Below are positions 1 to 56,465 of a stretch of DNA of 64,000 nt, one piece after another (positions within the stretch are counted from its first letter, which is position 1; every line of letters begins with the position of its first letter). The position numbers were made by a program, and so were the translations under genes. The notes under the pieces are model-generated. The model had not been told where the DNA came from. It was given only the letters and a program-made list of their open reading frames with translations, and did no database searches. The stretch lies in the IMG/VR virus record IMGVR_UViG_3300027759_006101, positions 248,001-312,000 of that record. One strand, 5' to 3'.

Positions 1-256
1 TATCACTAGTCTCGTTTCCAACTTGTTCTATTCTTTGCGAGAATTGTTGCTTGCTTGTTTGCTTGACATATTTTGAAACTCCCGAGCCAGCAATTAAATT
101 CGTGGTGTTTGTCATAGTCCAATCTGTATATCCTCTGAATCTAAAAGGATTATTAAATGTAAATCCAGTTCCAGGGTACAAAACATTACTAGATGGGTCT
201 AAAATATTATCAAATGTTTCCCAATATGGAACATTGGGGCCGCCTTTTACTCCCAT
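1..256 (-). CDS. LamG/ConA-like family protein, N-terminal part (runs off left edge; not in ORF track)
   Basis: ATG at 256 overlaps the TAA of the upstream gene; manual translation MGVKGGPNVPYWETFDNILDPSSNVLYPGTG... is open to position 1 and matches the family N-terminus MG..xP....LD.S...YPG.G. Confidence 0.7.
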   Translation of the reverse strand, partial: MGVKGGPNVPYWETFDNILDPSSNVLYPGTGFTFNNPFRFRGYTDWTMTNTTNLIAGSGVSKYVKQTSKQQFSQRIEQVGNETSD

Positions 257-1521
257 TATGGTAATCCAAATCTATTTTTAATAGAATTATATTGTGTAGA
301 TATTTCTGTTGCCGTAAGCGCTCTGTTATATATTTGACAAAAACCAATATTGGCAGTAATTCCAGCATTGGAGCCGGAATCTGACTTTTCCATAAAAAAT
401 CTGAATCTGGAAGTAGAATCATAAGTCATATCCGATGTGTCTGTTAAATTAGCACTATTTTCAGCAGATGTTCCAACAGCAGCACCATTAAAATAAATCT
501 TAAATGCGCTTTCTACTCCTGCAATTGTTGTTGGAGGTGTGCCAGTATAAGTTATAGCGTAATGAAGCCAACGTCTATGATAAAGAGAATATCTTGTAAC
601 ACCACCGGGATTTGTTCCTTGTGAATATCCAAAATCAAGATTGTCAGACAGATTACCCTTACCAGCATTCCAATGAGTGATGCTTGATCCTGTTGCTGGA
701 AACCAAGAAGCGCTAAAATTGTATAGGTTATTTCTCCAACCATTATTTCCAATTATAATTGGGCCTGTCAAAACTGTACTGCCTGTAGAAGTTTGTAAAT
801 CTGCTTTTAACTGCGATATATAAGGAACGAATCTATAAGTAGTAGATTTTTGAAGAGGGAAAATTGTAGCTGATGATGTGAATTCAAAAATATTACTATT
901 TTGCCAAGTTAATATATATGTTTGCCCAAAACTTGATGTAGCACTTGTAGAAACAAAAGGTCCAGCTTGTCCACTAAAATATGTTTGTCCATAGTCTCCC
1001 CAAGATATAGCAGTTCCAGCATAGACCCTTCTGCCACCAAAAAATAAATCATTAGCAAGAACAAAAGTTAATTTAGTTGAAGATTCAGGATATAAAGCCC
1101 ATCCTTTATTATTGACAAATCCATTGACCATAAATCCAGATCTATATTCATTAGAATTATTCGCCCATTGCAAGACACAAATTACTGTAAACGGAGTGCT
1201 ATTATTCAATTCAAATGTAGAATCTTTAATTTCTCTTTCTGTTGTTTGTTGTGTATATGCTCCAGAAATAAATGATTTTGGAGGGTTTCTAATCAAAGGA
1301 GCAGTCCAAGCATCAGTTGCACCAGACAAATGAAATGACTGCATTAATTGATTGGGATTTATAGTGGATGAATATTTTTGCATACTAACACCTAATCCAC
1401 TTCCTAAATCAACGTATTGAAAAATTCTTTGAGAACTTGCATCAAATTCAAAGGTCAAGTTACTAGAAAAGTCTTGCCCTCTATTTTCACTTAATTTTCT
1501 TTGTCCAACTTTACTTCCCAT
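256..1521 (-). CDS. LamG/ConA-like lectin-fold virion protein, enlarged (421 aa)
   Basis: N-terminal LTFEFDAS, WLHYAITY, C-terminal QIYNRALTATEISTQYNSIKNRFGL as in the other paralogues; about 200 aa longer than them. Confidence 0.75.
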   Translation of the reverse strand: MGSKVGQRKLSENRGQDFSSNLTFEFDASSQRIFQYVDLGSGLGVSMQKYSSTINPNQLMQSFHLSGATDAWTAPLIRNPPKSFISGAYTQQTTEREIKDSTFELNNSTPFTVICVLQWANNSNEYRSGFMVNGFVNNKGWALYPESSTKLTFVLANDLFFGGRRVYAGTAISWGDYGQTYFSGQAGPFVSTSATSSFGQTYILTWQNSNIFEFTSSATIFPLQKSTTYRFVPYISQLKADLQTSTGSTVLTGPIIIGNNGWRNNLYNFSASWFPATGSSITHWNAGKGNLSDNLDFGYSQGTNPGGVTRYSLYHRRWLHYAITYTGTPPTTIAGVESAFKIYFNGAAVGTSAENSANLTDTSDMTYDSTSRFRFFMEKSDSGSNAGITANIGFCQIYNRALTATEISTQYNSIKNRFGLP

Positions 1522-2210
1522 TATGTTAGCCCAAACCTACTTTTTAAGGCATTATAATTTTTAGCGTGTTCAGCAGCAGAAAGTTGTCTATTGTATAAGA
1601 GGCACATAGCAATTCTCCCTTGAAAATCTCTTACTGCCCCACTATACCCTTCTGTCCCTAAAAAATATGTAAATGATGCCGGAAATGTTGTTTGATTAGT
1701 TCTATAAGCACCTAATATATTCCACCCATTTACTAAAGATGCACCATCAGCTACTGCTGAACCATTAACATAATAAGTAGTACCAGGATTTCCCCAGTCA
1801 TCACCATTAAGACCTGCTGACGCTCTAACAGTCCAAGGACCAGTGCCATTTGCATTATTAAATCTCATACTTTTATCTGTATTTGTAGTGTCATTTGAAG
1901 CTGCTATCAGACCTACCAATGCTGCATTACTGTTCAGTGCAAAATCAGGGTAAAATACAATAGTACAATCTAAATATTGTTGAGACAAAGTTGATGAAAT
2001 AAACTTTGTTGATGCAGCTGTGGCAAAATTCCAATAACTAGAAGAACCAGCGCCAACAAAAGGGACTGTGCCATTAATTGTTCCATTTGCTCCTTTGTCA
2101 GTGAGATCAAATATTGCTGTGCCAGAACCAGGATAAGATCTCGGATTAGAAGCATCAATAGCCATTATTAATCCATTGGTGACAACTTGCGGATTATGAT
2201 AATGTCCCAT
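1521..2210 (-). CDS. LamG/ConA-like lectin-fold virion protein
   Basis: NGLIMAIDASNPRSYPGSG ... YNRQLSAAEHAKNYNALKSRFGL. Confidence 0.8.
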   Translation of the reverse strand: MGHYHNPQVVTNGLIMAIDASNPRSYPGSGTAIFDLTDKGANGTINGTVPFVGAGSSSYWNFATAASTKFISSTLSQQYLDCTIVFYPDFALNSNAALVGLIAASNDTTNTDKSMRFNNANGTGPWTVRASAGLNGDDWGNPGTTYYVNGSAVADGASLVNGWNILGAYRTNQTTFPASFTYFLGTEGYSGAVRDFQGRIAMCLLYNRQLSAAEHAKNYNALKSRFGLT

Positions 2211-2211
2211 A

Positions 2212-3336
2212 CTAGTACTCCACAGTTAGTTTAGGTATATCTTTTCTTTCAGCCCATATAGAATAAAAACAATTTATTTTTTTAAATAAAGATGTTCCTA
2301 TGTATACTTTGTTATCTTCACATTTTAAGAAATAATGTGAATTATTTTTTCCAATAGGTGTTAAGTGAACAGTTATTGTATTGTAATCAACTAATCCCAG
2401 CCAATAATCTGGTAAATAAATAATATTAGAAGTAGATATGCCTCTGATATAAACTCCATTTTCAGGACCTTCTAAAGATCCATATCGAAGTTTCATACCA
2501 GGCTTTGTTGGGTGATTAATTACAAAAGATTTATTTGTTGCAGAAATTTCACCATTAACTTCAAGCTGAAATTGGGGATTTGATACTCCTATTCCAACTC
2601 TGACTGTTGTGGTGGTAGGAGCAGAAATAACAAAAATTGTGTTTCCAATCGCTGCTCCGCCAAATACTGAAATAGTTTGACCTTGTCCAGCAGAAGTGTA
2701 CTCAAATCCATAAGAATCTGTGACGGCACTTCCTGCAGTTGCGTAATAAGCCATCCTATTAGCAACACCAGTAGCAACACCACCACCGGATGCTGCAAGA
2801 GGCACCCAACTCATCACACCTGCTGCAGTAGAAGATAAAACTGATGATCCAATTGCTGGAGATGTAGCAGGTAATACGTAGACAGTATTTCCTGTCGCTG
2901 AACTTCTTAATCCACTAAAGTTTGCACCGTTGAATAGTAAAAGAGTTTGCCCAATTGATGCATTTGAAGATATTGCTATGCCACCATTTAGTCTAGCAGC
3001 ACCAGTAATAAGTGAAGTTGTGTTTGTAGAATCTCCAACAAGTAATACGCCAGAAAGGTTTGCATTTGTAGCAAATGTATTCCATCTTAATACCGCTGAA
3101 CCTAAGTCATAGCCAGAGGTTCCAGGGGTGAAAGCAGATGTTCCAGAGTTATCATTGAAAGTGGCAATAACAAATGTGCCAATACCACTCGAAGCAGGAG
3201 AAAAACCCGAAGAATATCCTATGATATCAATTTTATTTTGAGAATCACCACGTATAGAAATTGATTGAGGAGATCCAGCGCTGTCATTCCAATAAATCTC
3301 TCCACTGGTTGGATTAATAATGACATCAGCAGGCAT
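2212..3336 (-). CDS. tail-fibre-like protein with C-terminal KSF-x-I-x-HP/LEGPE domain
   Basis: S/T/G-rich body, VGIGxxNP motif, YVLPATSP module shared with 13782-16928, C-terminal KSFVINHP..LEGPENGVYIRG..LPDYW..ERKD. Confidence 0.75.
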   Translation of the reverse strand: MPADVIINPTSGEIYWNDSAGSPQSISIRGDSQNKIDIIGYSSGFSPASSGIGTFVIATFNDNSGTSAFTPGTSGYDLGSAVLRWNTFATNANLSGVLLVGDSTNTTSLITGAARLNGGIAISSNASIGQTLLLFNGANFSGLRSSATGNTVYVLPATSPAIGSSVLSSTAAGVMSWVPLAASGGGVATGVANRMAYYATAGSAVTDSYGFEYTSAGQGQTISVFGGAAIGNTIFVISAPTTTTVRVGIGVSNPQFQLEVNGEISATNKSFVINHPTKPGMKLRYGSLEGPENGVYIRGISTSNIIYLPDYWLGLVDYNTITVHLTPIGKNNSHYFLKCEDNKVYIGTSLFKKINCFYSIWAERKDIPKLTVEY

Positions 3337-3344
3337 TTTTTATG

Positions 3345-3599
3345 CTATTCCTTTACAATAACAGCATTGAGTGAAACTAATAATAACTCTAAAATTGCAA
3401 TTCTTGTATCTTTTCCACTGTTACCTATATTTGCAAAATCATCACCATTGATTTGATAATTTTTTCTTTCAAGAGGCTGCATATCATAATCATAAAGACA
3501 GTACATAAATCTTATGCCTGTCTCTATATTAATATTCCCTTCTTCGATTGTAAGCCAAGCAACATTTAAGTTTCCTGCTTGGAGAATCCTGAATTTCAT
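3345..3599 (-). CDS. small hypothetical protein between fibre genes (possible fibre partner)
   Basis: 84-aa co-oriented ORF with GGATAA upstream of ATG. Confidence 0.65.
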   Translation of the reverse strand: MKFRILQAGNLNVAWLTIEEGNINIETGIRFMYCLYDYDMQPLERKNYQINGDDFANIGNSGKDTRIAILELLLVSLNAVIVKE

Positions 3600-3610
3600 T
3601 GATTATCCTG

Positions 3611-3644
3611 TTTCAGAAGGCAGATTTTACTCTGCCTTCTGAAA
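3611..3644. terminator. perfect 14-bp hairpin (terminator or mRNA processing/stability element)
   Basis: tttcagaaggcaga-ttttac-tctgccttctgaaa between two minus-strand genes; no clear U-tract on the transcribed strand. Confidence 0.55.
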
Positions 3645-3650
3645 TTTAGT

Positions 3651-6600
3651 TTATATCTTTTGCTCAATTTCAAGCGGAGCGTCTTTTCTTGAACCTATTA
3701 CAGTAAAGTCAACTTTGATATGCTTAAGTTTTCTATTCAAGAAATTAGTATTTGCAGCTATTATAAAGGAATTCTTTGATTTCTCTACAATATGTACTCC
3801 ATAGTTTCCGTATGGTGTCAAACTGATTGTAAAGTCATCGTGTACTAATTCAGACCAATATTCAGGTAATTCTATAACAAGATTGCCTCTACCCTCAACG
3901 GTTCCTCTATGATAAACTCCGTGTTCTGGGCCTTCAAGAACACCGTATACAAGTCTGTAACCTTCCTTGGTTGGGTGTTCAATGTCAAAGCTTTTAGTTG
4001 TTGCTCTAAGGTTACCATTTGCATCAACAGAGAATTTTGATGTTGCAGTAGAAGTAATACCTCTAATAAAGAAGTCACTTGTAGAAGAATCATCTCCAGA
4101 GACTGTTTGCAATGTAAGGTATGAATTATTTGTCAAAGCAGCTGAAGCAGAAATCGTAAGACCAGCTCCGCTTCCAAATATGCTACTTACTGTAAGTACG
4201 TCTGTAGATGGTACGTATGAAAGAGCAGCATCAGTAGATACTGCTAATCCTGCACCAGATGTACCTGTTGTCATCAACAAGAAATGAGCACCAGAAGCTG
4301 CTGCAGCATTGACATTAACACTTGTTGAAGTAGTTGCAAATCCTGTTAGATTACCACTAATTGCTCCAGAGAATGAACCTGCAGTTAATACATTAGTAGA
4401 AGGATTATATGTCAAACTAGTATCAGTAGAATGACCCAATCCCGAACCTGATGATGCGTTTACAAATGTGAGAAAGTGAGTTTGGTTAGCATCAGTAACT
4501 GTTACATTTGTACTTGTAGCAGTTGTAGCAAATCCAGTTACATTTCCAGTTACATTACCAGTTACATTACCAGACAATGATGCTGTTACGGTTGTTGCTG
4601 ATATGTTAGTTGAGCTTAATGTATCTGTTGACGGGTTGTAAGTCAATTGAGTGTCAGCTGATACTGCTAAACCTGCTCCGCTGGTACCAGTAGTAAATGT
4701 AACAAAGTGTGCAGCATTAGTTCCCGCAGCATTGACATTTACGCTCAGAGCAGTAGATGCAAAACCAGTTACAGTACCACTAATTGCTCCAGAGAATGTT
4801 CCAGCAGTCAACACATTTGTTGAAGGATTATATGTCAGGTTTGTATCAGCAGATTGACCTAAACCAGCACCTGAAGAAGCATTTACAAATGTGATAAAGT
4901 GAGTTTGGTTAGCATCAGTTACTGTTACATTTGTACTTGTCGCAGTTGTAGCAAATCCTGTCACGTTTCCAGTCACGTTTCCAGTTACGTTTCCAGATAA
5001 AGAGGCAGTAACTGTAGTTGCTGAAATGTTTGTTGAACTTAAAGTATCTGTTGATGGATTGTAAGTCAATTGAGTATCAGCAGATACTGCTAAACCAGCG
5101 CCAGAAGAAGCTGTTACAAAGGTAATGAAGTGTGTGGCATTCAAAGCACCTAAAGCAACATTTGTGCTTGTCGAAGTTGTAGCAAATCCTGTAACATTTC
5201 CTGTTACGTTACCAGTTACATTACCAGATAACGATGCTGTAACTGTAGTAGCAGAAATATTTGTTGAACTCAAGGTATCTGTTGATGGATTGTAAGTCAA
5301 TTGAGTATCAGCAGATACTGCTAAACCTGCACCACTTGAACCTGTGCTGAATGTTACAAAATGTGTAGCATTAGCTGCACCAAGAGCTATATTCACACTA
5401 GTAGCAGTTGTAGCAAAACCAGTTACATTGCCTGTTACATTGCCAGTTAGTGGGCCTGAAAAGAGACCTGCTGTCAAAGTATTGGATGATGGGTTATATG
5501 TTAAGCTGGTATCAGCAGATTGACCTAACCCTGAACCGGATGAAGCATTTACAAATGTGACAAAGTGAGTTTGGTTAGCATCAGTTACTGTTACGTTCGT
5601 ACTATTAGCAGTTTGAGCAAATCCTGTAACATTACCAGTTACATTTCCAACAAGAGTACCAAAGAAATTGGTATAGGTTGCAGCGGTTCCTGCAGCGTTA
5701 CCAGCTAATGTCGCCTCAATAGCAAAGAATACTGCGGTTCCTGCAGTGCCTGAATATATATTTGAACCAGCAGTTGTTGTTGCGTTTGGAATGAATCTGA
5801 ACTTACCATCAGTGTCATTGAATCCAAAGAAACCAGTAGTAGCTGTACCAGCATTAGACCATCTAAACTCAATACCTCTATCTTGGTTATTGTCTAAAGT
5901 TGAGTGAGTTCCACCAACTCCAGAACCAATAACAATAACAGGGTCTACTATTGTTGAAACTGTTGAGTCAACTGTAACTGTCGTACCTTGAACTGTTAAG
6001 TTACCTGTAATAACTAAGTTGTCATTTACATTTGTTTGGCCACCTACAGAGTCCAGAGTTAAGTTTCCTGACGTTGTGTTGATTGTATTTGAAGAACTAC
6101 CGACAATTACACCATTTGCAGTTAATTGTCCAGTGCCTATAGACATTGCATTAGTTGATGGGTTTAGTGTAATTGAGACATCAGTTGATAACGCAGCGCC
6201 AGCACCTGCAGTCGAACTTTGCAAAGCAGAAAACACAAGATAATGTGTTGAATTTTCTGCAGCTGACTGCAATCCTACATTGTTTGCAGTTGAAGCAACG
6301 CCACTAATAGTACCACTAAATGCACCGCTGAAGTTTGTAGCGGAAAGTGTGTCTGTGTTTGGATTGTAGAACAGAGTTGAGTCTGTAGATACTGCAACAC
6401 CAGAGCCAGTTTGTGTTGGTGAGAATAAAACAAAATGACTTGCGGCAGCTGCTCCAGCTGCTACATTGATGCTAGTAGCAGTTGTAGCAAAACCTGTTAC
6501 ATTTCCTGTTACATTTCCTGTAAGAGGGCCAGAGAAAGAACCAGCTGTCAATACATTTGTTGATGGATTATAGGTAAAATCTGTGTCAGTAGATTGTCCT

Positions 6601-8192
6601 AATCCTGATGCTGCAGAAGCATTTACAAATGTAATAAAGTGAGTTTGGTTAGCATTTGTAGCTGAAACGCTTGTACTAGTAGCAGTTGTAGCAAAACCTG
6701 TGACATTTCCTGTTACATTGCCTGTTACATTGCCACTTAATGAAGCTGTTACAGTTGTTGCTGAAATGTTTGTTGAACTTAAAGTATCTGTTGAAGGATT
6801 ATAAGTCAATTGAGTGTCAGCTGATACTGCTAAACCAGCACCAGAAGAAGCTGTTACAAAGGTAATGAAATGTGAAGCATTCAAAGCACCTAAAGCAACG
6901 TTTGTACTGGCAGCAGTTGTAGCAAAACCAGTTACATTACCTGTTACGTTGCCAGACAATGATGCTGTAACTGTTGTTGCTGAGATATTTGTTGAGCTTA
7001 ATGTATCTGTCGATGGGTTGTAAGTCAACTGAGTATCAGCAGATACTGCTAATCCAGAGCCTGAAGTACCTGTTGTGAATGTTACAAAATGTGAAGCATT
7101 TGCAGCACCCGCTGCAACATTTACACTAGTAGCAGTTGTAGCAAAACCAGTGACATTTCCTGTTACGTTACCTACCAGCGAACCAGAGAATGAGCCAGCA
7201 GTTAAGGCATTTGAGTTGGGATTATATGTTAAGTTTGAGTCTGTTGATTGCCCAAGACCTGCGCCAGAAACTGCATTTACAAAAATAATATAATGAGGGT
7301 TGTCAGCATTAGTTGTTGTTACACTTGTACTTGTAGCAGTTGTTGCAAAACCTGTCAAGTTTCCTGTAAATGCAGAAGAAACAGCACCTACTGTTAAGGT
7401 ATTTGTCGAAGGATTGTAAGTAAGGTTTGAGTCTGTTGATGCACCTAAACCTGATCCATTAGTAGCATTTGCGAACAATGGGTAATGAGTAGCATTAGCA
7501 TCAGTAACTGATACAAAAATACTTGCAGCAGTTGTTGCGATGGCAGCAATTGTTGGAATGTCATCCGTATAAGCAATTGTTTTTGCTGTTCCACTACCAA
7601 GGCCAAATCTTAATCTTAATCCTGTAGAATCATAGTACAACGCACCATTATCATTGGTAGCACCAGTACCAACGTTGAAATACATATAATCTGTATCCAT
7701 TCTACCAAGAGTAGGATAAATCCAAATTTTTGCAGTTACACCAGTACCACCGCCATAATTAGGGAAAGGTTTGTATAAAGTTGCTCCATCGTATCCACCA
7801 AATGCTAAAACTGGCTGAGTACCTGTTGTTGCATAATTGTAGATGGTGGATCTTACATTAGTATCTACACCTGTGGAGTCTGGTGTAGTTGGAGCATTCC
7901 AATAAAAGTTTATTTGAGAGACAGAAGTAGCTGCAGCGCCACCGTAACCTGGAATGATTACAATGTCTTTATTACCACCAGCGCCAGGACCACCTCCTGA
8001 CCCAGATGGTTGACCTAAGGCTCTAAAATCTGCAGATTGAACTTTTACAACTTCAGGTTCTTGAACTTTTACAACTTCAGGTTCTTGAACTTTAACAACT
8101 TCAGGTTGTTCTGATATGTCAACTGCTCTATTAGATTTTTTTAAGGATTGTAAGACTTTTTCTGCAAAGTCTTGAGGATTTTGATCTCCCAT
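3651..8192 (-). CDS. long repetitive tail-fibre-like protein (1513 aa) with C-terminal KSF/HP/LEGPE domain
   Basis: 14 copies of a ~65-75-aa GNVTGFATTA...HFxTF...DxxLTYNPST repeat; central DRGIEF...GFFGF module; C-terminal KSFDIEHP..LEGPEHGVYHRG. Confidence 0.8.
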   Translation of the reverse strand: MGDQNPQDFAEKVLQSLKKSNRAVDISEQPEVVKVQEPEVVKVQEPEVVKVQSADFRALGQPSGSGGGPGAGGNKDIVIIPGYGGAAATSVSQINFYWNAPTTPDSTGVDTNVRSTIYNYATTGTQPVLAFGGYDGATLYKPFPNYGGGTGVTAKIWIYPTLGRMDTDYMYFNVGTGATNDNGALYYDSTGLRLRFGLGSGTAKTIAYTDDIPTIAAIATTAASIFVSVTDANATHYPLFANATNGSGLGASTDSNLTYNPSTNTLTVGAVSSAFTGNLTGFATTATSTSVTTTNADNPHYIIFVNAVSGAGLGQSTDSNLTYNPNSNALTAGSFSGSLVGNVTGNVTGFATTATSVNVAAGAANASHFVTFTTGTSGSGLAVSADTQLTYNPSTDTLSSTNISATTVTASLSGNVTGNVTGFATTAASTNVALGALNASHFITFVTASSGAGLAVSADTQLTYNPSTDTLSSTNISATTVTASLSGNVTGNVTGNVTGFATTATSTSVSATNANQTHFITFVNASAASGLGQSTDTDFTYNPSTNVLTAGSFSGPLTGNVTGNVTGFATTATSINVAAGAAAASHFVLFSPTQTGSGVAVSTDSTLFYNPNTDTLSATNFSGAFSGTISGVASTANNVGLQSAAENSTHYLVFSALQSSTAGAGAALSTDVSITLNPSTNAMSIGTGQLTANGVIVGSSSNTINTTSGNLTLDSVGGQTNVNDNLVITGNLTVQGTTVTVDSTVSTIVDPVIVIGSGVGGTHSTLDNNQDRGIEFRWSNAGTATTGFFGFNDTDGKFRFIPNATTTAGSNIYSGTAGTAVFFAIEATLAGNAAGTAATYTNFFGTLVGNVTGNVTGFAQTANSTNVTVTDANQTHFVTFVNASSGSGLGQSADTSLTYNPSSNTLTAGLFSGPLTGNVTGNVTGFATTATSVNIALGAANATHFVTFSTGSSGAGLAVSADTQLTYNPSTDTLSSTNISATTVTASLSGNVTGNVTGNVTGFATTSTSTNVALGALNATHFITFVTASSGAGLAVSADTQLTYNPSTDTLSSTNISATTVTASLSGNVTGNVTGNVTGFATTATSTNVTVTDANQTHFITFVNASSGAGLGQSADTNLTYNPSTNVLTAGTFSGAISGTVTGFASTALSVNVNAAGTNAAHFVTFTTGTSGAGLAVSADTQLTYNPSTDTLSSTNISATTVTASLSGNVTGNVTGNVTGFATTATSTNVTVTDANQTHFLTFVNASSGSGLGHSTDTSLTYNPSTNVLTAGSFSGAISGNLTGFATTSTSVNVNAAAASGAHFLLMTTGTSGAGLAVSTDAALSYVPSTDVLTVSSIFGSGAGLTISASAALTNNSYLTLQTVSGDDSSTSDFFIRGITSTATSKFSVDANGNLRATTKSFDIEHPTKEGYRLVYGVLEGPEHGVYHRGTVEGRGNLVIELPEYWSELVHDDFTISLTPYGNYGVHIVEKSKNSFIIAANTNFLNRKLKHIKVDFTVIGSRKDAPLEIEQKI
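8037..8107. repeat. 24-bp tandem repeat x3 (encodes PEVVKVQE)
   Basis: ttgaacttttacaacttcaggttc twice exactly and a third time with minor changes. Confidence 0.95.
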
Positions 8193-8207
8193 GTTTTCTA
8201 CTCCATA

Positions 8208-8951
8208 TTATTTAGGTTGCTCTACAATTAATTTGATATCCGTTCTCTCTCCGACTACAAAATAATCGAATTCAATATATTGTTTACGTAATAGGTTCCT
8301 TCTTACCCTTTGAACTTTGAATTCAGAATTGTCACTTTTAGAAACAAATAAAGAATCATTTACTCGGGAAGTTATATGAACAGTGATTTCATTTTCAGAT
8401 AATGCTTTAAAATAGTTAGGTAATGCAACAGAAACACTCTCATATCCTGATGCTCTTCCTCTTTGATATATTCCGTGTTCTGGTCCCTCTAAAGATCCGT
8501 GTTCCAGATACTTATTTGGGTCTAAGGGATGTTGGATTTTAAAGCTTTTTGTTTGAGCCTTTATACTTCCGCCAACAATAATAGTAGTTCCAAACTGCTG
8601 CATTACTGAATCTGTGAGTTGTGTTCCCCCGGCATCAAATAATGGAATATATGCTGATGTGCCCGAGCCTGTAATTGATCCTGCAGGTGTAGATGTAAGA
8701 GTAATATCGTTGGCGCCAAAGGAAAATGAAATTCCTGAGCCAGCAATGAGTGTTCTATATACTAAACCTGAAGCGCCACTATTTGAACTTAATAAAGCGT
8801 TTCCAGCAGATATACTTGTTAGGCCTGTACCGCCTGCTGTAATTGCTGTAACATTTTGTGTACGCCAAGCAGTGCCATCATAGCGCCAGGTTTTACCGCT
8901 TTCTGTGTAAACCTGATTAGTGCTTGGACCTGAGGGGAAATTTATCGCCAT
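8208..8951 (-). CDS. short fibre-like protein with C-terminal KSF/HP/LEGPE domain
   Basis: N-terminus NFPSGPSTNQVY..GKTWRYDGTAW shared with 16931-25099; KSFKIQHPLDPNKYLEHGSLEGPEHGIYQRG. Confidence 0.75.
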   Translation of the reverse strand: MAINFPSGPSTNQVYTESGKTWRYDGTAWRTQNVTAITAGGTGLTSISAGNALLSSNSGASGLVYRTLIAGSGISFSFGANDITLTSTPAGSITGSGTSAYIPLFDAGGTQLTDSVMQQFGTTIIVGGSIKAQTKSFKIQHPLDPNKYLEHGSLEGPEHGIYQRGRASGYESVSVALPNYFKALSENEITVHITSRVNDSLFVSKSDNSEFKVQRVRRNLLRKQYIEFDYFVVGERTDIKLIVEQPK

Positions 8952-8985: not shown

Positions 8986-9016
8986 TATTCTGCATCTTTG
9001 TTATAAAATATTTCTT
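8986..9016 (-). promoter_or_regulatory. putative promoter AAGAAATA-N15-GCAGAATA
   Basis: same two boxes with identical spacing at 25133-25163. Confidence 0.5.
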
Positions 9017-9680
9017 ATATTCCATATCTAAATCTTGTAGCATTGAAATTTTGCAATATTTCTTGTTGTGTGAGGGCTCTGTTGTAAATAAGAGCCCCAG
9101 CAATTCTTCCTGTAAAATTATTACCATTGTCATATGAACCAATATTTATGTCTTGGCTTCCGGTAAAAGCTGTGGTATTAGCACTTGTTCCATCTTGAGT
9201 ACCATTTAGATATAGTTTCCAGCCTGATGTGCTGCTGTATGTAACTGCGCAAAAATACCATCTATTCAGTGATAGTGTTGTTGAACCAACTACTGTATTC
9301 CAAACATTATTATGCCCAGCATTTAATTTATTAGATGCAAAAAGCCAAAATGCGTGTTGTGCAGTATTTCCACCACTTATAATATTGTTTGAAGTTGAAA
9401 AATTTGTTACATAAATATATGCTATCTTTGTGTATTCTGTTTTTGAAAGAGTGTTAGCACTAGAATTTACAATGACATAATCATTTGAGCCATCAAAGGA
9501 AATATATGATGAGCTACCAGAACCAACATATGAAGCTCCATTTGTTAGGGTACTAGTGTTTGAACTTCTACTTAAGTCATACCAAGTATTTCCTGATCCA
9601 GAATAACTTCTTAGATTTACTGCATCAAGATATAGCACTAATCCATCTGATACAATGCTTGGGTTATATCCTACTGCCAT
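9015..9680 (-). CDS. LamG/ConA-like protein (array member 7)
   Basis: DGLVLYLDAVNLRSYSGSG, SFDGSNDY, WYFCAVTY, IYNRALTQQEILQNFNA. Confidence 0.85.
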   Translation of the reverse strand: MAVGYNPSIVSDGLVLYLDAVNLRSYSGSGNTWYDLSRSSNTSTLTNGASYVGSGSSSYISFDGSNDYVIVNSSANTLSKTEYTKIAYIYVTNFSTSNNIISGGNTAQHAFWLFASNKLNAGHNNVWNTVVGSTTLSLNRWYFCAVTYSSTSGWKLYLNGTQDGTSANTTAFTGSQDINIGSYDNGNNFTGRIAGALIYNRALTQQEILQNFNATRFRYGI

Positions 9681-10336
9681 TACAATCCAAATCTCTTTCT
9701 TGTAGCGTTATAATTTTGGAGAATTTCTTGTTCTGTTAAAGCTCGGTTGTAGATTTGAGCCAATGCAACAGTGCTATTTGAATACGAACCATATCCTGTG
9801 CCTCCCCAACCTAAAGAAAGCATATTAGTAGTTTCATAAACTATAGGTGTATTGACTGATGAAACACCAATTCCATTTATATAAAGATTATTTGCATTTG
9901 ATATTGAAGTAATTGTAACGTGATACCATTGATTGGTATTTGCTGTATATGCCATAGCGGTAGGATAAGAGCGAATTACTCCGCCAATTGTTCCAATATA
10001 ATTTCCTTGTCTCCAATTCACTCCATCAGTCCAACCAAAACAGACTGCAACATCCCCTGAAGTCAAACTTGCAAATTTAGCCCATACAGATAAAGTTATA
10101 TTTGTACCTTGAATATCATTTCTTCTACCTAATGCTATGTGGTCATTAGTCCCATCAAATATAAAACTGCCATTATTAGAACTTGTAAAACCAACACCAT
10201 TAATGAGTGTTGCACCTGTTCCAGCATATAAATCATAGAATGTTAAACCACTACCAGAATAGCTTCTTCTATTAGCAGCATCAAGATAAAATATTAATCC
10301 ATCAGATATAATGCTTGGAGAATGTGCAAGTCCCAT
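9680..10336 (-). CDS. LamG/ConA-like protein (array member 6); start corrected to MGLAHSP
   Basis: ATG at 10336 lies 1 nt after the upstream TGA and gives the family N-terminus; FIFDGTND, WYHVTIT, IYNRALTEQEILQNYNA. Confidence 0.85.
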   Translation of the reverse strand: MGLAHSPSIISDGLIFYLDAANRRSYSGSGLTFYDLYAGTGATLINGVGFTSSNNGSFIFDGTNDHIALGRRNDIQGTNITLSVWAKFASLTSGDVAVCFGWTDGVNWRQGNYIGTIGGVIRSYPTAMAYTANTNQWYHVTITSISNANNLYINGIGVSSVNTPIVYETTNMLSLGWGGTGYGSYSNSTVALAQIYNRALTEQEILQNYNATRKRFGL

Positions 10337-10337
10337 A

Positions 10338-11000
10338 TCAAATGTTATACCGTTCACGCATAGCATTAAAGTTTTGTTGAATTTCTGTGGCTGATAATGC
10401 TCTGTTAAAAATTTGAACTTGAGATATATTTCCGTTAAAATAAAAACCGCCACCAGAAAATCCAATTAAAAGACCATTACTAGTTAATACATTACTAGAA
10501 ACTGTATTTAAAGTAAAATTTGCAATTCCATCTCTGTAAATATAATGTGTTGTACTGCTTCTTACCGAAACTAAATAATGCCATTCATTATCTGCAAATG
10601 GTAAAAAAATTCCATAGTCACCACTTGTTTCTCTTATACCTCCACCCCAATAAGAAGGAGTTGTAATGCTTCTTCCTAACCAAAACCCATTGATATAATC
10701 AAATTCTATAAGTCTTGCAACAATACCATTTGAAGATGAAGGCTTAAACCATAAAGTGACTGTAAAATCTCCTGATATTGATGTTAGTGAAGGTACATTG
10801 ATATAATCATTAGTACCATCAAAGATAAAACTCCCATTATTTGCACTACTAAATCCAACACCATTTACGAGAGTTCCACCAATTCCACCCACTAAACCAT
10901 TAGAAGTTAAGCCAGATCCAGAGTAACTTCTTAAGTTAGAAGCGTCTAATTGAAAAACTAATCCATCAGATATAGAGTTTGGTCCAGCAGAAATTCCCAT
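10338..11000 (-). CDS. LamG/ConA-like protein (array member 5)
   Basis: DGLVFQLDASNLRSYSGSG, FIFDGTNDY, WHYLVSV, IFNRALSATEIQQNFNA. Confidence 0.85.
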   Translation of the reverse strand: MGISAGPNSISDGLVFQLDASNLRSYSGSGLTSNGLVGGIGGTLVNGVGFSSANNGSFIFDGTNDYINVPSLTSISGDFTVTLWFKPSSSNGIVARLIEFDYINGFWLGRSITTPSYWGGGIRETSGDYGIFLPFADNEWHYLVSVRSSTTHYIYRDGIANFTLNTVSSNVLTSNGLLIGFSGGGFYFNGNISQVQIFNRALSATEIQQNFNAMRERYNI

Positions 11001-11695
11001 TATCTGTATCTTCCTTTTGTGGCATTATAATTTTGCTTTATTTCTTGGGCAGATAAAGCTCTATCAAATAGCTGAACTTGTGATATATTTCCATTAAAAA
11101 TAAATTCATTAGCTTCATCTCTGGCAATTCGAACATTAATAGAATTACTTATGGTTGTGATAGGAGATCCTCCGCCATTCGAAATTGAATAAGAAATTCC
11201 ATCAACAAATAAATCTGTCGCAACTTTATTTGTAATTACTACAGCAACGTGATGCCAGACATTATCATTAATTAATTTACTACAATAATATATAATCCAT
11301 CTACTTCCATCAGTTTGTAATAAAATACTTAATCCTTGTGTAGGAATATCTCCTCGAACAAACATTGCCCAACCAGCTCCACTACCATAGTTTACCAATT
11401 TTGCAACTATCATTTGTACATTAGTGATTGCAGATGTTTTTTGCCAAGCTACTACTGTAAAATTTGTGGGATTATCAAGAAAATTTCCACAATCTACATA
11501 ATCATTTGTCCCATCGAAAATAAAACTTCCATTATTTGATGAAGTAAATCCAACACCATTTACAAGAGTTCCACCTATTCCGCCAACAAGTCCATTAGCT
11601 GTTAGACCTGTTCCTGAATAGCATCTTGGATTAGCTGCATCAAGATACAATACTAATCCATCAGAAACAATTATATTATTATAATCAATGCCCAT
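11000..11695 (-). CDS. LamG/ConA-like protein (array member 4)
   Basis: DGLVLYLDAANPRCYSG, DNVWHHVAVV, FDRALSAQEIKQNYNA. Confidence 0.85.
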   Translation of the reverse strand: MGIDYNNIIVSDGLVLYLDAANPRCYSGTGLTANGLVGGIGGTLVNGVGFTSSNNGSFIFDGTNDYVDCGNFLDNPTNFTVVAWQKTSAITNVQMIVAKLVNYGSGAGWAMFVRGDIPTQGLSILLQTDGSRWIIYYCSKLINDNVWHHVAVVITNKVATDLFVDGISYSISNGGGSPITTISNSINVRIARDEANEFIFNGNISQVQLFDRALSAQEIKQNYNATKGRYR

Positions 11696-12369
11696 TAAAG
11701 TCCATATCTCCTTTTTGTAGCATTATAATTTTGTACTATTTCTGATGCAGTTAAAGCACGATTGTAAATTTTAGCAATACTTATATCACCTTGTAGATAT
11801 TCTGTGGCATAAGTTTTTGCTAGTTGAATTGTAGTTGAAGTTACGTTATGGCTTGTTGGAGTGTCAGAAGCAACAAGAACATTATTAGCATATATTTTTC
11901 TTGTAGTGCCATCAAAAGTAACTCCAGCGTAAAACCATTGATTATTTTGAATATTTCCATTATTGTTAGATGATATTAAATCGTTAGCCCACCAATAATG
12001 AGTCAAATTTCCTAGAGTAGCCGTATATGTTCTAAATGCATTGCTTTGATTGGAAACAGTAAAACCACCAATAGAAATCAAGCCTCTTCCATCTGCCCAA
12101 GAAGAAAGTCTTGCAAATAAGAACATAGAGTAATTATCATTTGCTACAGGAATAGAAGAAGTTCCAGCTCCAGTAAAATAACCTGTTGCGCCTGTTGAAA
12201 AATATCCAGAAGAATTAAAAGATGGGGAATTTGTTAAAGTTAAGTTATTTGCGTTTCTTGACAAATCGTACCAAGTATTGCCTGATCCTGAATAACTTCT
12301 TGGATTTGCTGCATCCCAATATCCCACTAATCCATCAGTGACAATTATAGGAGAATGATCAAGCCCCAT
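11695..12369 (-). CDS. LamG/ConA-like protein (array member 3)
   Basis: DGLVGYWDAANPRSYSGSG, WFYAGVTFDG, IYNRALTASEIVQNYNA. Confidence 0.85.
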   Translation of the reverse strand: MGLDHSPIIVTDGLVGYWDAANPRSYSGSGNTWYDLSRNANNLTLTNSPSFNSSGYFSTGATGYFTGAGTSSIPVANDNYSMFLFARLSSWADGRGLISIGGFTVSNQSNAFRTYTATLGNLTHYWWANDLISSNNNGNIQNNQWFYAGVTFDGTTRKIYANNVLVASDTPTSHNVTSTTIQLAKTYATEYLQGDISIAKIYNRALTASEIVQNYNATKRRYGL

Positions 12370-13025
12370 TATCTATATCTCCCTTTTGTGGCGTGGTAGT
12401 TTTGTAACACTTCTTGGGCTGTTAATGCTCGGTTGTACATATTGAATGAAGAAATTTGACAAGCAGCATATTGAGATGCATTAGCTTCTGCACCACCAAA
12501 CAAATAATCAGTTGGAAAATTGGAAATAGTTATAGTAGTAGTTAAAACTGAAACTCCATTCAAGTAAATAATTGTTCCGTCATTTACTCCTGATTGATAT
12601 GTCATAACTACATTTTTCCAAGTGTTGTCTGCAATATTAATACCAGTAGATCTTGTTTGATTTCCACCCCAATCATAGGCAACTAACACACTATCATTAT
12701 AAAAAAAACCATAAGCACCTTGTCTTGCAATAATGCCTCTAAAGCCTCCACCTGGTGCGCTTGTTTTTGTCCAAGCTGATAATGTGCCTGAAGATTGTTG
12801 CAATGTAGAACTATTACCAAAATTTATATAGTCATTAGTTCCATCAAAAATAAAACTTCCATTATTAGAAGAGGTAAATCCAACTCCATTTACAAGAGTC
12901 CCAACAATACCACCTACTAATCCATTTGCAGTAAAACCAGCTCCTGAATAACTTCTTGTATTTCCAGCATCTAATTGAACAATTAATCCATCAGTAACTT
13001 CGATAGGTCCAATATCAATGCCCAT
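12369..13025 (-). CDS. LamG/ConA-like protein (array member 2)
   Basis: DGLIVQLDAGNTRSYSG, DNTWKNVVMTY, YNRALTAQEVLQNYHA. Confidence 0.85.
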   Translation of the reverse strand: MGIDIGPIEVTDGLIVQLDAGNTRSYSGAGFTANGLVGGIVGTLVNGVGFTSSNNGSFIFDGTNDYINFGNSSTLQQSSGTLSAWTKTSAPGGGFRGIIARQGAYGFFYNDSVLVAYDWGGNQTRSTGINIADNTWKNVVMTYQSGVNDGTIIYLNGVSVLTTTITISNFPTDYLFGGAEANASQYAACQISSFNMYNRALTAQEVLQNYHATKGRYR

Positions 13026-13028
13026 TAT

Positions 13029-13775
13029 TTATAACCCATAGATAGCTTTATAAGTGTTGTAGTTAGTTGCTACTTCGTCAGCTGTCAATCCTCTGTTGTA
13101 TACTTGAAAACTACCTACTCTCATAGCACAATAACTTCCCTCACCCATATTTGTACCGTCTTCAGCACCTAAAGCATAATGTAAATTAAAGCCATTGTTA
13201 AAAGGAGCTTGTCTTGTTAAAGTTGCAGTGCCGATTGATGCCCCATTAATATATGCAGTAAGGGTAGTTCCAGAGTAAGTCCAGCCAAGGTTATACCAAG
13301 TATTGAAAGATTTTGATGAACTTGTCACTCTATTAACTAAATTACCATGCCAAACACTAAAAGATATTAGACCACCACTTGATATTTCAATGTTTGAATC
13401 GTGCCAAGCTGAGTTTACAACAGCTTGGCCTATTTCAGAAACAATAACCCCTTGCTCAGTAGGATAACACCAAATAAAAATTGATTGGGCTGTAGATTTA
13501 TTAGGAGATGTTCCACTTATCTGCGCATTTAAGGATGTTGAAGTCATAACGTATTGATTAGAACCATTTAAGGATATATATCCACCGTCACTGCTGGAAT
13601 AAGTTGGACTATTAGCTAAAGTCGCATTACTATTACCTACATCATCAGTCCATGTTGAGCCAGAAGGAGGTGCTGTTTTCAAGTGACAAATTAACCCAGA
13701 ACCAACAACTGCTACACGAGTTGAAAAGATTCTACTTAAAGGTTTATGTTGACTGGAAAATGTGTTTAATGGCAT
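13029..13775 (-). CDS. LamG/ConA-like protein (array member 1)
   Basis: SGSTWTD, LNGSNQY, NTWYNLGWTYSG, VYNRGLTADEVATNYN. Confidence 0.8.
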   Translation of the reverse strand: MPLNTFSSQHKPLSRIFSTRVAVVGSGLICHLKTAPPSGSTWTDDVGNSNATLANSPTYSSSDGGYISLNGSNQYVMTSTSLNAQISGTSPNKSTAQSIFIWCYPTEQGVIVSEIGQAVVNSAWHDSNIEISSGGLISFSVWHGNLVNRVTSSSKSFNTWYNLGWTYSGTTLTAYINGASIGTATLTRQAPFNNGFNLHYALGAEDGTNMGEGSYCAMRVGSFQVYNRGLTADEVATNYNTYKAIYGL

Positions 13776-13781
13776 TATATT

Positions 13782-16700
13782 TTATCCGTAAGTGGAATAT
13801 TGACCTAAAACTGTCCAAGCAGATCCAGTTCTAATTAAACTGAAACCGACTATATCAACCTTACTTGCCGTTCCAGTTGGGGTAATATTATTTACCCATT
13901 TTATTGTTTGCGCACTACCATCTATTTGAAGTGCTGTTGACATATAAGGAGTGACACCTTGTGCTAATACTAAAGTCACACCAATGGCTCTATCATTTGT
14001 AGTTGGAACATTTGTTATATTTGCTGTAAAGTTATTGGAAATAGAGCTGTGATAAAAAATTGAACCTGTTGACAAATCGTGTGTAACTGTTCCTGTAGCA
14101 GATGTTTTTGTAGTTAATTTTTCTGATGTATATGTAAGAGTTGTTAAGCCAGAGATACTTAAATCTGATCCAATATTTAAAGTTCCACCAATACCAACTC
14201 CACCTGTTACTACTAATGCTCCAGTAGTTGTAGATGAAGAGTTTGTAGTTGAAGTGATAACAACATTACCACTTGAACTCAAGCTAGATACTCCCATACC
14301 TCCATCAGCGCCTACTCTAAATCTAGTAACAGCATTTTTTTGTAAATTTATTAAGTCGCCATTAAAAGCTGATATTGCATTTGCAGCAATAAGTGTTCCA
14401 TCAACACTTCCGTTAAAAGAACCAATTGTTTGTTCAATCAATAATGCAGCAGAAGTAGAAGTAGGTAGTTCTTCACCTGGAAAATTACCTAATCTTAAGC
14501 CATTAGTTGTAGTATTGAAGAATAAACTTCTTGTTCCACCAAACCCACTACCAGATTTATATTGAACACTTCCGTCTAAAGCGCCACCTGAAGAACCTCC
14601 AGAAGTAATCATCGGCACCCAACTCATTACACCAGCAGAAGTGGATTGCAATACTGATGAACCAGTAGCCGGAGATGTTGCTGGTAATGTATATACTGTA
14701 TTACCTGTAGCAGATGAAACAAAAGCTGTGTAATTTGCTCCATTAAATAATTGAAGTCTTCCACCAACAGAAACTGACTGACCAATTCCTACTCCACCAT
14801 ATACCCATAAAGAGCCTGATGTAGTAGACGTAGAGGCAATATTTCCACCAATAGATATTCCAGTGCCGGTAAACTGTAAATTAGCATTTTCGCTAACGGC
14901 ATTAGATGAGGCTGGATAAAAAGCAGCATAGGTCGCAGTTCCACTATTTACTGTGCCTGAACTGGATCCCCCCATAATATTGGTTGCAACGCCATTGCCA
15001 CCAGTAGTGATATCTAAAAAGAAACCTCTTGCAGAACCACCTTGCTCAAAGAATCTAAGTCTATTTTGGAAGATATCAATTGTTACACCGTTAGTAATTG
15101 TGGAGTTGGTAGCTGGCTTGTTAAGGAAAATCTCTCCGCCTTCATCACCAAAACTCTGCATAATGCTTAATTTGGTATTTGCATTTGCAGCAACAAATAA
15201 ATCGCCTTGAACTCCCACTCCTCCGCTTACGACTAATGCGCCTGTAGAAGATGATGTTGAAGATGTCGTAGATGTTACTGCTAATCCAGAAACATGTAAT
15301 ATTTCAGTAGATGGATTAAATGATATTGTTGAATCACTTGAAACAGCAGAGCCAGCAGATAACGATGATGGTGTAAATAAAATTGGATGGAAAACATTTG
15401 CGTTTCCAGCTGTGTTTACTACAATATTTTGCGCTGTATTTCCAGAAGCTGTCATAGGCACCCAGCTCATTACACCAGCAGCGGTAGACTGTAATACTGA
15501 AGATCCTGTTGCTGGACTTGTGGCTGGCAATGTATAGACTGTGTTGCCAGTTGCAGAAGAAACAAATGCAGTGTAGTTTGAGCTATTGAATAATTGTATC
15601 CTTCCACCAACACTTACAGATTGACCAATACCAACTCCGCCTGTTACAACTAAAGAGCCTGTTGAAGCTGTATTTGATGCCGTAGTTGAGGTTATTGCAG
15701 CACCAGAAACGCTCAGTATATCTGAAGATGGATTATATACTAATGTGGTGTTAGAAGATACCGCTAAGCCAGAAGCCGAGCCAAAAGATGGTGTGAATAA
15801 TAATGGGTGATTTGCATTTGTAGATGCTGAAATTACATTTATATTTGTAGCAGTAGTGGCAATTCCTGAAGAAGTTGCATTTCCTACAAATAATGTTGAT
15901 TGAGCTACATATGTTGGAGTGGCACCAGATCCAGCTGAAGTTAAAACATAACCTGAATTTGAATTTGCAGTTAATCTTGCCCAAGTAGAAGAAGTATTTG
16001 CGTAAAGTATATCGCCTACTGTAAATGTAGTTTGGAGACCAGTGCCACCATAAAAGGCTGTAATTGAAGTTCCAGACCAAACACCAGTAGTAATTGTGCC
16101 TAAAGCTGTGAGACTAGAATTTGTTACTCCTGTTCCTAAAGATGAACTAGAAAGAATAGTGGTATTATTTATTTTATATGTATTACCTGATGCTAAATTG
16201 AGAGATTCAGAAGATGACCAACCTGTACCTGTATACCAATTTATAGATTTATCAGTAGCACCACGAAGAGTTATACCGCCACCTTCAGCAGTAACGTCGG
16301 ATGGAGTTACAACAGAACCTAATTCAATATTTTTATCATCAACGGTCAAGGTTACTGAATTTATTGTAGTTGTTGTGCCATTTATTGTCAAATCACCAGC
16401 AACATATAAACTACCGCCAATTCCCACTCCACCAACAATTGTAAGAGCGCCTGAAGATGAATTTGTGGCTGCAGTTGTGTAGCCTATATTTATAGATGTC
16501 CCAGTATTTGTAAAACTTAAAGAACCAGTTATTGCAGTTCCAGCAGTAGGATAGTATGGAATTGAATTGAGTGAACCATCGTAGACAGTTCCAGCTCCGC
16601 CTGCACTTCCCCCAGTAACAGTCATAGGCACCCAACTCAATACACCAGCAGAAGTGGATTGTAATACTGAACTTCCTGTAGCTGGACTAGTTGCTGGTAA

Positions 16701-16928: not shown

Positions 16929-16930
16929 TA

Positions 16931-25099: not shown

Positions 25100-25132
25100 T
25101 AGTTATCCGAATTTTTGGAGGTGCTTATTAAA

Positions 25133-25163
25133 TATTCTGCGTAGTTCATATATTTTATTTCTT
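25133..25163 (-). promoter_or_regulatory. putative promoter AAGAAATA-N15-GCAGAATA
   Basis: matches 8986-9016 in both boxes and spacing. Confidence 0.5.
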
Positions 25164-27562: not shown

Positions 27563-27563
27563 A

Positions 27564-56419: not shown

Positions 56420-56465
56420 ATAGGTATTGCAGGTGTTTATTGGAAAAATATAATTAGGACTTGCA

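What the first reader, a model, noticed from the sequence alone, without database searches (positions are those of the whole stretch)
2212..8550. Three fibres end in the same unassigned ~110-aa domain (KSF-x-I-x-HP...LEGPE-x-G-x-Y-x-RG...LPxY...RxD)
Seen at 2212-2535, 3651-3995 and 8208-8550: charged globular domains capping almost uncharged fibres of 374, 1513 and 247 aa, with invariant K, H-P, E-G-P-E and R-G. Established: trimeric fibres often end in autocleaving chaperones (peptidase S74 with S-D-x-R-x-K; phi29 gp12 peptidase G2), and neither signature is present. Inference: a different class of intramolecular trimerisation chaperone, or a common adaptor for LamG tips.
Basis: partly seen in the sequence, partly recalled or inferred. 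Interest (0 to 1): 0.6.

Follow-up and report, generated by a model that had tools for sequence, protein, structure and literature searches.

The report
Conserved lectin-like foot capping phage fibres
Three tail-fibre-like proteins of an uncultured 358-kb phage end in the same ~130-residue domain, a member of a very large unnamed phage family that is predicted to be a three-fold lectin-like "foot" held together by an invariant neck; it is more probably a permanent trimerising tip than a new self-cleaving chaperone.

Summary
ORFs 2212-3336, 3651-8192 and 8208-8951 (minus strand; 374, 1513 and 247 aa) have G/S/T/A/N-rich shafts with 6-7% charged residues. Each ends in a homologous domain with 20-28% charged residues and the quoted motifs.

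The domain has no Pfam, NCBIfam or PDB sequence match. It belongs to PHROGs 17490 and 28536 (function unknown). A profile search found 11,437 cluster representatives, and in all 150 listed hits and 88 locus genes the domain sits at the extreme C-terminus.

My best reading is a retained trimerisation nucleus and distal foot. Self-cleavage is unsupported but untested. The LamG link has gene-order support only: the arrays touch such fibres in 25 of 31 loci that have them, and 44 of 76 loci have none.

This is a new sequence family of a known structural kind, of moderate interest.

The parts
2212..3336 (-). P0001, a 374-aa fibre-like protein with a G/S/T/A/N-rich shaft and the C-terminal domain
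2212..2592 (-). Domain copy 1 (aa ~249-374). KSF starts at nt 2532 and LEGPE at nt 2475.
3651..8192 (-). P0002, a 1513-aa giant fibre with internal repeats of about 70-140 aa and the C-terminal domain
3651..4055 (-). Domain copy 2 (aa ~1380-1513). KSF starts at nt 3995 and LEGPE at nt 3938.
8208..8951 (-). P0003, a 247-aa short fibre. Its N-terminus resembles tail collar and tail fibre PHROGs (phrog_3449, phrog_31660), and it carries the C-terminal domain.
8208..8609 (-). Domain copy 3 (aa ~115-247), the copy that was modelled. KSF starts at nt 8549 and LEGPE at nt 8492. The neck is aa 128-165 and the beta-sandwich aa 160-237.
3345..3599 (-). Conserved 84-aa ORF directly after the giant fibre. 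Its function is unknown, and a role in fibre assembly is only a guess.
9015..13775 (-). Array of seven single-domain LamG (PF13385) genes directly upstream of P0003
256..2210 (-). Two LamG-type genes directly downstream of P0001. The 1521-2210 gene starts 2 nt after the end of P0001; it matches only my LamG profile and PHROGs, not Pfam. The 256-1521 gene has a sub-threshold Pfam LamG hit.

Best explanation
Each of the three proteins is a trimeric tail-fibre-like protein capped by one member of a very large phage domain family that has no Pfam entry. The domain has two parts. The first is a neck of about 35 residues (G-x3-A-x2-K-S-F-x-I-x-H-P ... L-x2-G-x-L-E-G-P-E-x-G-x-Y-x-R-G), almost invariant across the family, that wraps around the three-fold axis and forms most of the inter-chain contacts. 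The second is a beta-sandwich of about 80 residues with the H-type-lectin / gp53-like 'foot' fold, with a conserved framework (P64, Y66, T80, R122, D124) and variable outer strands and loops. I propose that the domain folds first and sets the register of the three chains, so that the low-complexity shaft can zip up from C- to N-terminus. It would then stay on the mature fibre as its distal foot, where the variable surface binds a host surface component (probably a glycan) or another virion protein. Shown here: homology of the three copies; strictly C-terminal position; predicted fold; predicted trimer with the motifs at the interface; the conserved-neck, variable-body pattern. Inferred: the role as folding nucleus, retention on the virion, and ligand binding.
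For: Position: the domain ends 0-20 residues (mostly 0-3) before the stop in all 88 domain-bearing genes of 76 IMG/VR loci. It is at the C-terminus of all 150 listed representatives, which are 145-2617 aa long. It therefore caps shafts of any length and type, including four with collagen-like repeats.

Trimer: ipSAE 0.93 (runs 0.94, 0.93, 0.93) against a best control of 0.00, with at least 96% contact agreement and partner pLDDT at least 89. The mark was reached by 20 of 30 solved homo-pairs and 1 of 23 solved single chains, and those counts hold only roughly here because my own alignment and three copies were used. The interface includes residues 7-52 and an L40-L40 contact, which I take to place L40 near the axis.

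Conservation: among 117 orthologues of P0003, residues 131-170 have 0.01-0.67 bits of entropy. Residues 171-220 have 1.1-1.5 bits, among the most variable stretches of the protein, comparable only to shaft residues 71-90.

Precedent: the LEC domain of KP32gp38 is necessary and sufficient for trimerisation (PMC13082707). The R-pyocin foot is proposed to bind sugar through variable distal loops (PMC6363177).

Parsimony: P0001 and P0003 contain no other globular domain that could serve as a tip.
Confidence: 0.58

Rival explanations
1. Docking hub. The conserved trimeric domain is a standard socket onto which separately encoded tip proteins (single-domain LamG proteins here) are mounted, so that one fibre design can carry exchangeable adhesins. 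This is compatible with the domain also being the trimerisation nucleus.
For: High conservation fits a protein-protein socket better than a host-specific adhesin. There are ten LamG-type genes in the window, nine of them flanking the three fibres. In related loci the gene directly downstream of a domain-bearing fibre is a LamG gene in 18 of 88 cases, usually starting -3 to +4 nt from the fibre's stop. LamG arrays touch such fibres in 25 of 31 loci, against a block-shuffle mean of 11.5, sd 2.3 and a maximum of 23 in 5000 shuffles. Flavobacterium phage immuto has a fibre with this domain followed by two LamG genes annotated 'structural protein' that are 31-35% identical to the window's.
Against: 44 of 76 related loci have no LamG gene within 8 kb. 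The neighbouring genes tested in S-T4 and Mufasa8 have no Pfam LamG hit. Downstream neighbours are otherwise diverse. No fibre-domain-LamG fusion was seen. The LamG proteins show no obvious separate docking peptide. The loci are not phylogenetically independent, and fibres and adhesin-like genes cluster in late operons anyway.
Confidence: 0.2
2. Self-cleaving intramolecular chaperone of a new class. The domain nucleates trimerisation and then cuts itself off near the KSF motif, as Peptidase S74 domains do.
For: The position is strictly C-terminal, as for S74. An invariant Lys sits next to a 97%-conserved Ser exactly at the shaft-domain boundary, together with invariant His and Glu residues. 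No S74 domain exists anywhere in this 358-kb record, so these fibres need another assembly solution. The domain is predicted to trimerise strongly.
Against: There is no sequence relation to S74 or G2. The fold is a beta-sandwich of a class retained in solved mature tailspikes and fibres, not the S74 fold. The Ser is Ala in 5 and Glu in 1 of 226 members. Cleavage would leave P0003 as a tipless shaft of about 130 aa. The sandwich surface is among the most variable parts of the protein among orthologues, which is not expected of a discarded folding aid, although this could be neutral drift.
Confidence: 0.1
3. Small enzyme or ion-dependent module. The invariant K/H/E/E/Y/R/R/D set at the subunit interfaces forms three active or metal/ligand sites (for example a glycan-modifying activity, or a His3 metal site on the axis) that act on a surface component common to many hosts.
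For: There is an unusual number of invariant polar residues, and they lie at inter-chain contacts. [quoted passage not shown]
Against: No similarity to any enzyme family. The domain is small. The conserved residues are mostly in the neck rather than the distal loops. No coordinates were available to check the geometry.
Confidence: 0.07

Closest known systems
C-terminal domain of the cyanophage Pam1 tailspike (PDB 7eea, residues 688-758)
   Different: Only 17% identity, and no sequence-level hit. It follows a tailspike body rather than a thin fibre. The KSFxIxHP...LEGPE neck is not part of the match.
Gp53-like_C / R-pyocin 'foot' (PF21882; PDB 4mtm, 6cl6, 6cxb)
   Different: No Pfam hit at E<=1. 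R-pyocin fibres needed a separately encoded chaperone, co-expressed, for soluble yield. The family here has an invariant neck and much higher overall conservation.
H-type lectins (PF09458; Helix pomatia agglutinin 2ccv, discoidin I 2w94, SLL-2 3wmp)
   Different: No sequence match. The sugar-binding residues were not compared. Those proteins are not fibre caps.
LEC domain of Klebsiella phage KP32 gp38 (PDB 9qrm)
   Same: A C-terminal lectin-like domain shown by experiment to be essential and sufficient for trimerisation (PMC13082707), which is the function proposed here.
Peptidase S74 intramolecular chaperone (endosialidase, T5 pb1)
   Same: A strictly C-terminal module of trimeric fibres that drives trimer folding.
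   Different: No Pfam match, no S-D-x-R-x-K motif, a different predicted fold, and no evidence of cleavage.

Membership tests
PHROG 17490 / 28536 (function unknown) | Profile match | tested here: met
   All three proteins match: phrog_17490 at E 1.1e-34, 3.6e-24 and 1.4e-15; phrog_28536 at E 4.3e-31, 5.6e-18 and 1.9e-12. The matches cover the C-terminal domain.
Peptidase S74 intramolecular chaperone | PF13884 profile match | tested here: not met
   No hit at E<=1 in the three proteins, and none in the whole 358-kb record at E<=0.01, with positive controls working.
   The motif is absent from the translations. The family has K-S-F instead, and that Ser is not invariant, at 220 of 226.
Peptidase S74 intramolecular chaperone | Autocatalytic release of the domain after trimerisation | not testable with these tools
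   This needs protein expression or virion mass spectrometry.
Peptidase G2 (phi29 gp12 type) | Pfam profile match | tested here: not met
   No Pfam family at E<=1 other than two chance-level hits.
H-type lectin (PF09458) | Profile match | tested here: not met
   No hit at E<=1.
H-type lectin (PF09458) | Beta-sandwich fold assembled as a trimer | tested here: met
   [not shown]
H-type lectin (PF09458) | Sugar-binding residues at the protomer interface | not tested
   Neither a residue-level superposition nor model coordinates were available.
Gp53-like_C (PF21882) | Profile match | tested here: not met
   No hit at E<=1.
Gp53-like_C (PF21882) | Distal C-terminal trimeric sandwich of a tail fibre | tested here: met
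   [not shown]
Adaptor for LamG tip proteins (hypothetical system) | Consistent co-occurrence with LamG genes | tested here: inconclusive
   Adjacent in 25 of 31 loci that have LamG genes, against a null of 11.5, but LamG genes are absent from 44 of 76 loci.
Adaptor for LamG tip proteins (hypothetical system) | Physical binding of LamG proteins to the domain | not tested

The most novel reading that the evidence does not exclude
The invariant K-S-F-x-I-x-H-P / L-E-G-P-E / R-G / R-x-D constellation is a catalytic or autocatalytic centre. On that reading this family of more than 11,000 clusters would be a second, structurally unrelated class of self-processing intramolecular chaperone built on a lectin-like sandwich, widespread in marine, freshwater and soil phages that lack Peptidase S74. 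A milder variant is a universal socket for exchangeable LamG adhesins.
Probability: 0.1. Interest if true: 0.7.

Novelty: new variant of a known kind. Interest (0 to 1): 0.35.

Why it matters
The family is very large: 11,437 representatives at 50% identity with E<=1e-3, and 4,781 at E<=1e-10. It caps fibres of cyanomyoviruses (P-SSM2, S-SM2, S-T4, S-SSM7 and others), Flavobacterium and Arthrobacter phages and many uncultured jumbo phages. Yet it has no Pfam or NCBIfam model, and in the phage records I looked at these proteins are mostly annotated 'hypothetical', at most 'minor tail' or 'tail fibre-like' protein.

A named domain model would mark the C-terminal end of host-recognition fibres in thousands of environmental phage genomes. 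The sharp split between an invariant neck and a variable sandwich body points to where host-range variation should be looked for. If the neck alone proves sufficient for trimer registration, it could serve as a compact trimerisation tag, like the T4 foldon. The link with LamG arrays suggests a modular adhesin system in marine phages that deserves a structural look.

Tried and rejected
- **Sequence assignment:** Pfam and NCBIfam scans of the three proteins gave only chance-level hits: CBM32 E 0.083, YgjK_N E 0.072, ELWxxDGT E 0.14.
- **PDB by sequence:** searches with P0003 and with profiles A1 and A2 gave nothing meaningful; the best was tektin-3 at E 1.1.
- **Foldseek against PDB:** no hit at E<=1e-3, top hit Pam1 at 6e-3. 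The exhaustive aligner was needed to see the fold.
- **Language-model look-alikes:** only unnamed viral clusters were returned.
- **Nucleotide search of 12 kb against cultured phages:** one 43-nt match only, so there is no close cultured relative. The topoisomerase protein search did not reveal a host.
- **Collagen link:** I tested whether the domain typically caps collagen-like triple helices, which would argue for a registration role. Only 4 of 150 representatives and 4 of 91 locus genes have eight or more G-X-Y repeats, and these are not adjacent to the domain. That is weak support only.
- **Prophage distribution:** a strict-pattern scan of 185,579 species genomes gave 10 loci, all on MAG contigs. 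No conclusion about hosts follows.
- **Literature searches:** four searches found no description of this family.
- **S74 lead-in strand:** I recalled that the 'GIGT..P...L-x-V-x-G' lead-in strand resembles the segment preceding S74 domains in other fibres. I could not test this here, so it is not used as evidence.

Full report
**Setting.** The window is bases 248001-312000 of a 358,269-base IMG/VR viral record, estimated 89% complete. G+C is about 35%. It has no close cultured relative: a 12-kb nucleotide search found only a 43-nt match in a Synechococcus phage.

The left 30 kb is a minus-strand block of structural genes. In transcription order it holds:
- four large fibre-like ORFs of 997, 799, 2722 and 1056 aa;
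- seven single-domain LamG genes (13775 to 9015);
- the 247-aa protein P0003;
- the 1513-aa protein P0002;
- an 84-aa ORF;
- the 374-aa protein P0001;
- two more LamG-type genes.

**Observation.** Their shafts are 56-62% G/S/T/A/N and only 6.1-6.9% D/E/K/R. The last ~115 residues are 20-28% charged. The three C-termini align with 33 invariant columns. Within the phage's own record they are the only three copies, at E 4.8e-21 and 3.3e-15 to the P0003 copy. The profile shows the domain begins about 20 residues earlier, with a 'L-x-V-x-G-x3-A' strand.

**Family.**
- There is no Pfam or NCBIfam hit at E<=1, and the PDB sequence and profile searches at E<=10 returned only chance-level rows, E 0.47 and worse.
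- All three copies match PHROGs 17490 and 28536, both of unknown function.
- A profile of the three copies, searched against 1.84 billion cluster representatives, finds 11,437 proteins at E<=1e-3, 4,781 at E<=1e-10 and 664 at E<=1e-30.
- In all 150 listed hits (145-2617 aa) the domain is at the extreme C-terminus.
- In 76 IMG/VR loci, all 88 domain-bearing genes end 0-20 residues (mostly 0-3) after the domain.
- Cultured carriers include many Synechococcus and Prochlorococcus myoviruses, Flavobacterium phage immuto ('putative tail fiber-like protein') and Arthrobacter phages Mufasa8 ('minor tail protein') and Sonali ('hypothetical protein').
- A strict-pattern scan of 185,579 prokaryote species genomes found only ten loci, all on MAG contigs.

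In 226 distinct family members, G14, K21, F23, I25, H27, P28, L35, L40, E41, G42, P43, P64 and R122 are invariant. A18, S22, G38, E44, Y48, R50, G51, Y66, T80 and D124 are at least 97% conserved. Numbering is that of P0003:115-247; add 114 for P0003 residues. This set is biased, because it was gathered through these motifs or as top profile hits.

**Fold.** AlphaFold2 with a 46-sequence alignment gives mean pLDDT 82.6, with above 90 on most of the sandwich. The model is almost all beta.

Foldseek alone found nothing at E<=1e-3. The exhaustive aligner gave the following for model residues 46-123:

|---|---|
| Cyanophage Pam1 tailspike C-terminal domain (rmsd 1.8 A, 69 residues) | 9.9-10.0 |
| LKA1 gp49 | 7.7-7.9 |
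| Helix pomatia/aspersa agglutinins and discoidin I (H-type lectins) | 7.5 |
| AP22 gp54 | 6.7-7.1 |
| phi297 tailspike | 6.9 |
| Sf6 tailspike | 6.7-6.9 |
| Oekolampad phage RBP | 6.8 |
| R1/R2 pyocin foot | 6.5 |
| K1 lyase C-terminus | 6.2-6.3 |
| AP22 gp53 | 6.2 |
| KP32gp38 | 5.1 |

**Assembly.** Three copies of the domain were folded with controls.
- Score: ipSAE 0.94, 0.93 and 0.93 in three runs, against 0.00 for the best of three controls.
- Agreement: the runs share at least 96% of contacts, and the partner's pLDDT is at least 89.
- Calibration: the mark was reached by 20 of 30 proteins solved as homo-pairs and by 1 of 23 solved as single chains. These counts hold only roughly here, because my own alignment and three copies were used.
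- Interface: it includes residues 7-52, which covers every conserved motif. There is an L40-L40 contact between copies, which I take to place the LEGPE turn near the three-fold axis. There are also cross-chain contacts of Y48 with L40, E41 and G42, and of R50 with residues 76 and 119.

The model supports trimerisation but does not prove it.

**Evolutionary pattern.** I aligned 117 orthologues of P0003 (57-98% identical in the domain) and measured entropy per ten-residue block:
- residues 131-170 (the neck): 0.01-0.67 bits;
- residues 171-220 (the outer sandwich): 1.1-1.5 bits, among the highest blocks in the protein, matched only by shaft residues 71-90 (1.36-1.54);
- residues 221-240 (the last strands, with R-x-D): conserved again.

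So the domain combines a fixed trimer core with a variable exposed body, as described for R-pyocin feet.

**Interpretation.** The best-supported reading is a retained C-terminal trimerisation nucleus that doubles as the fibre's distal foot. Four points support the trimerisation role:
- the position is strictly C-terminal;
- shafts of any length and kind sit upstream;
- the trimer is predicted with confidence, with the invariant residues at its core;
- the similarly folded LEC domain of KP32gp38 is experimentally essential and sufficient for trimerisation (PMC13082707).

Three points support retention: the structural relatives are all present in mature proteins, the body is variable, and P0001 and P0003 have no other globular part. 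What the foot binds is unknown. A glycan is the default for this fold class.

**Self-cleavage.** Nothing supports it. There is no relation to S74 or G2, and the fold differs. The Ser of KSF is Ala in five members and Glu in one. Nothing excludes it either. The number of invariant polar residues is striking, and the phage has no S74 domain at all. I give it about 0.1.

**LamG link.**
- In 31 related loci with LamG genes, the LamG array directly touches a domain-bearing fibre gene in 25. Shuffling gene blocks within loci gives 11.5 +/- 2.3, with a maximum of 23 in 5000 shuffles.
- A LamG gene is the immediate downstream neighbour in 18 of 88 cases, usually -3 to +4 nt from the fibre's stop.
- The unrelated Flavobacterium phage immuto shows the same fibre-LamG-LamG order, with LamG proteins 31-35% identical to the window's.

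Against it:
- 44 of 76 loci have no LamG gene.
- Other downstream neighbours are diverse: a huge fibre family (15), the 85-aa ORF (9), another domain-bearing fibre (7), an ~850-aa family (7) and others.
- No fusions were seen.
- The loci are not independent lineages.
- No binding test could be run.

I give a docking role about 0.2. It is not exclusive of the main reading.

**Novelty.** By sequence this is a distinct, very large and uncurated family. By fold and position it is another version of the trimeric lectin-like foot known from R-pyocins, AP22 and many tailspikes, with a family-specific invariant neck. I rate it a new variant of a known kind, with moderate interest. The practical value is a domain model for annotating environmental phage fibres, plus a candidate compact trimerisation module.

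**Limits.**
- All structural statements rest on predictions.
- No coordinates were available, so residue-level geometry (His on the axis, salt bridges, location of the variable loops) is inferred only from the contact lists.
- The invariance statistics are biased by how the sequences were collected.

Noticed in passing
[not shown]
   Followed up: partly
window 9015-13775 (-), 256-2210 (-), 56454-57293 (+): There are ten LamG-type genes in the window (most match PF13385; three rest on my own LamG profile or a sub-threshold hit). Nine of them flank the three fibres as tandem arrays of paralogues of about 220 aa, 28-36% identical to the first. The same family follows the equivalent fibre in Flavobacterium phage immuto.
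   Followed up: partly
window 9680-10465 (-): The TTG start listed for this LamG ORF is probably too far upstream, since it overlaps the previous gene by 128 nt. Alignment with its paralogues puts the start at MGLAHSP, the ATG at 10336.
   Followed up: partly
window 8037-8107 and 4303-7169 (-): The N-terminus of P0002 carries three exact-like copies of EPEVVKVQ (a 24-nt repeat). Its shaft is built of long repeats with periods of 219, 231 and 423 nt, with 12-nt 'NVTG' sub-repeats.
   Followed up: no
window 13782-30557 (-): Four further large fibre-like ORFs (1056, 2722, 799 and 997 aa) lack the C-terminal domain. The 799-aa one hits phrog_9729 (tail fibre) and phrog_3304 (L-shaped tail fibre assembly, E 2.4e-11), but it has no Pfam S74 match and the whole record has none.
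   Followed up: partly
window 42952-44319 (+), 51365-56003 (+), 44333-50161 (+): There is a PhoH-like gene and both subunits of a type II topoisomerase. A 1942-aa plus-strand ORF between them was not examined.
   Followed up: no
L008, L010-L014 (IMG/VR loci): Related jumbo-phage contigs keep the same order as the window, a short fibre of about 250 aa followed by a fibre of about 1,200-1,700 aa, both ending in the domain. L012 also has nine LamG genes upstream. The whole module is therefore conserved in a phage lineage.
   Followed up: partly
Atlas shape search, row 5: A cluster of 390 Nucleocytoviricota proteins with YadA-head repeats has a C-terminal part resembling model residues 15-133 (TM 0.55). 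The same cap might therefore occur on giant-virus fibres. This was not verified by sequence.
   Followed up: no
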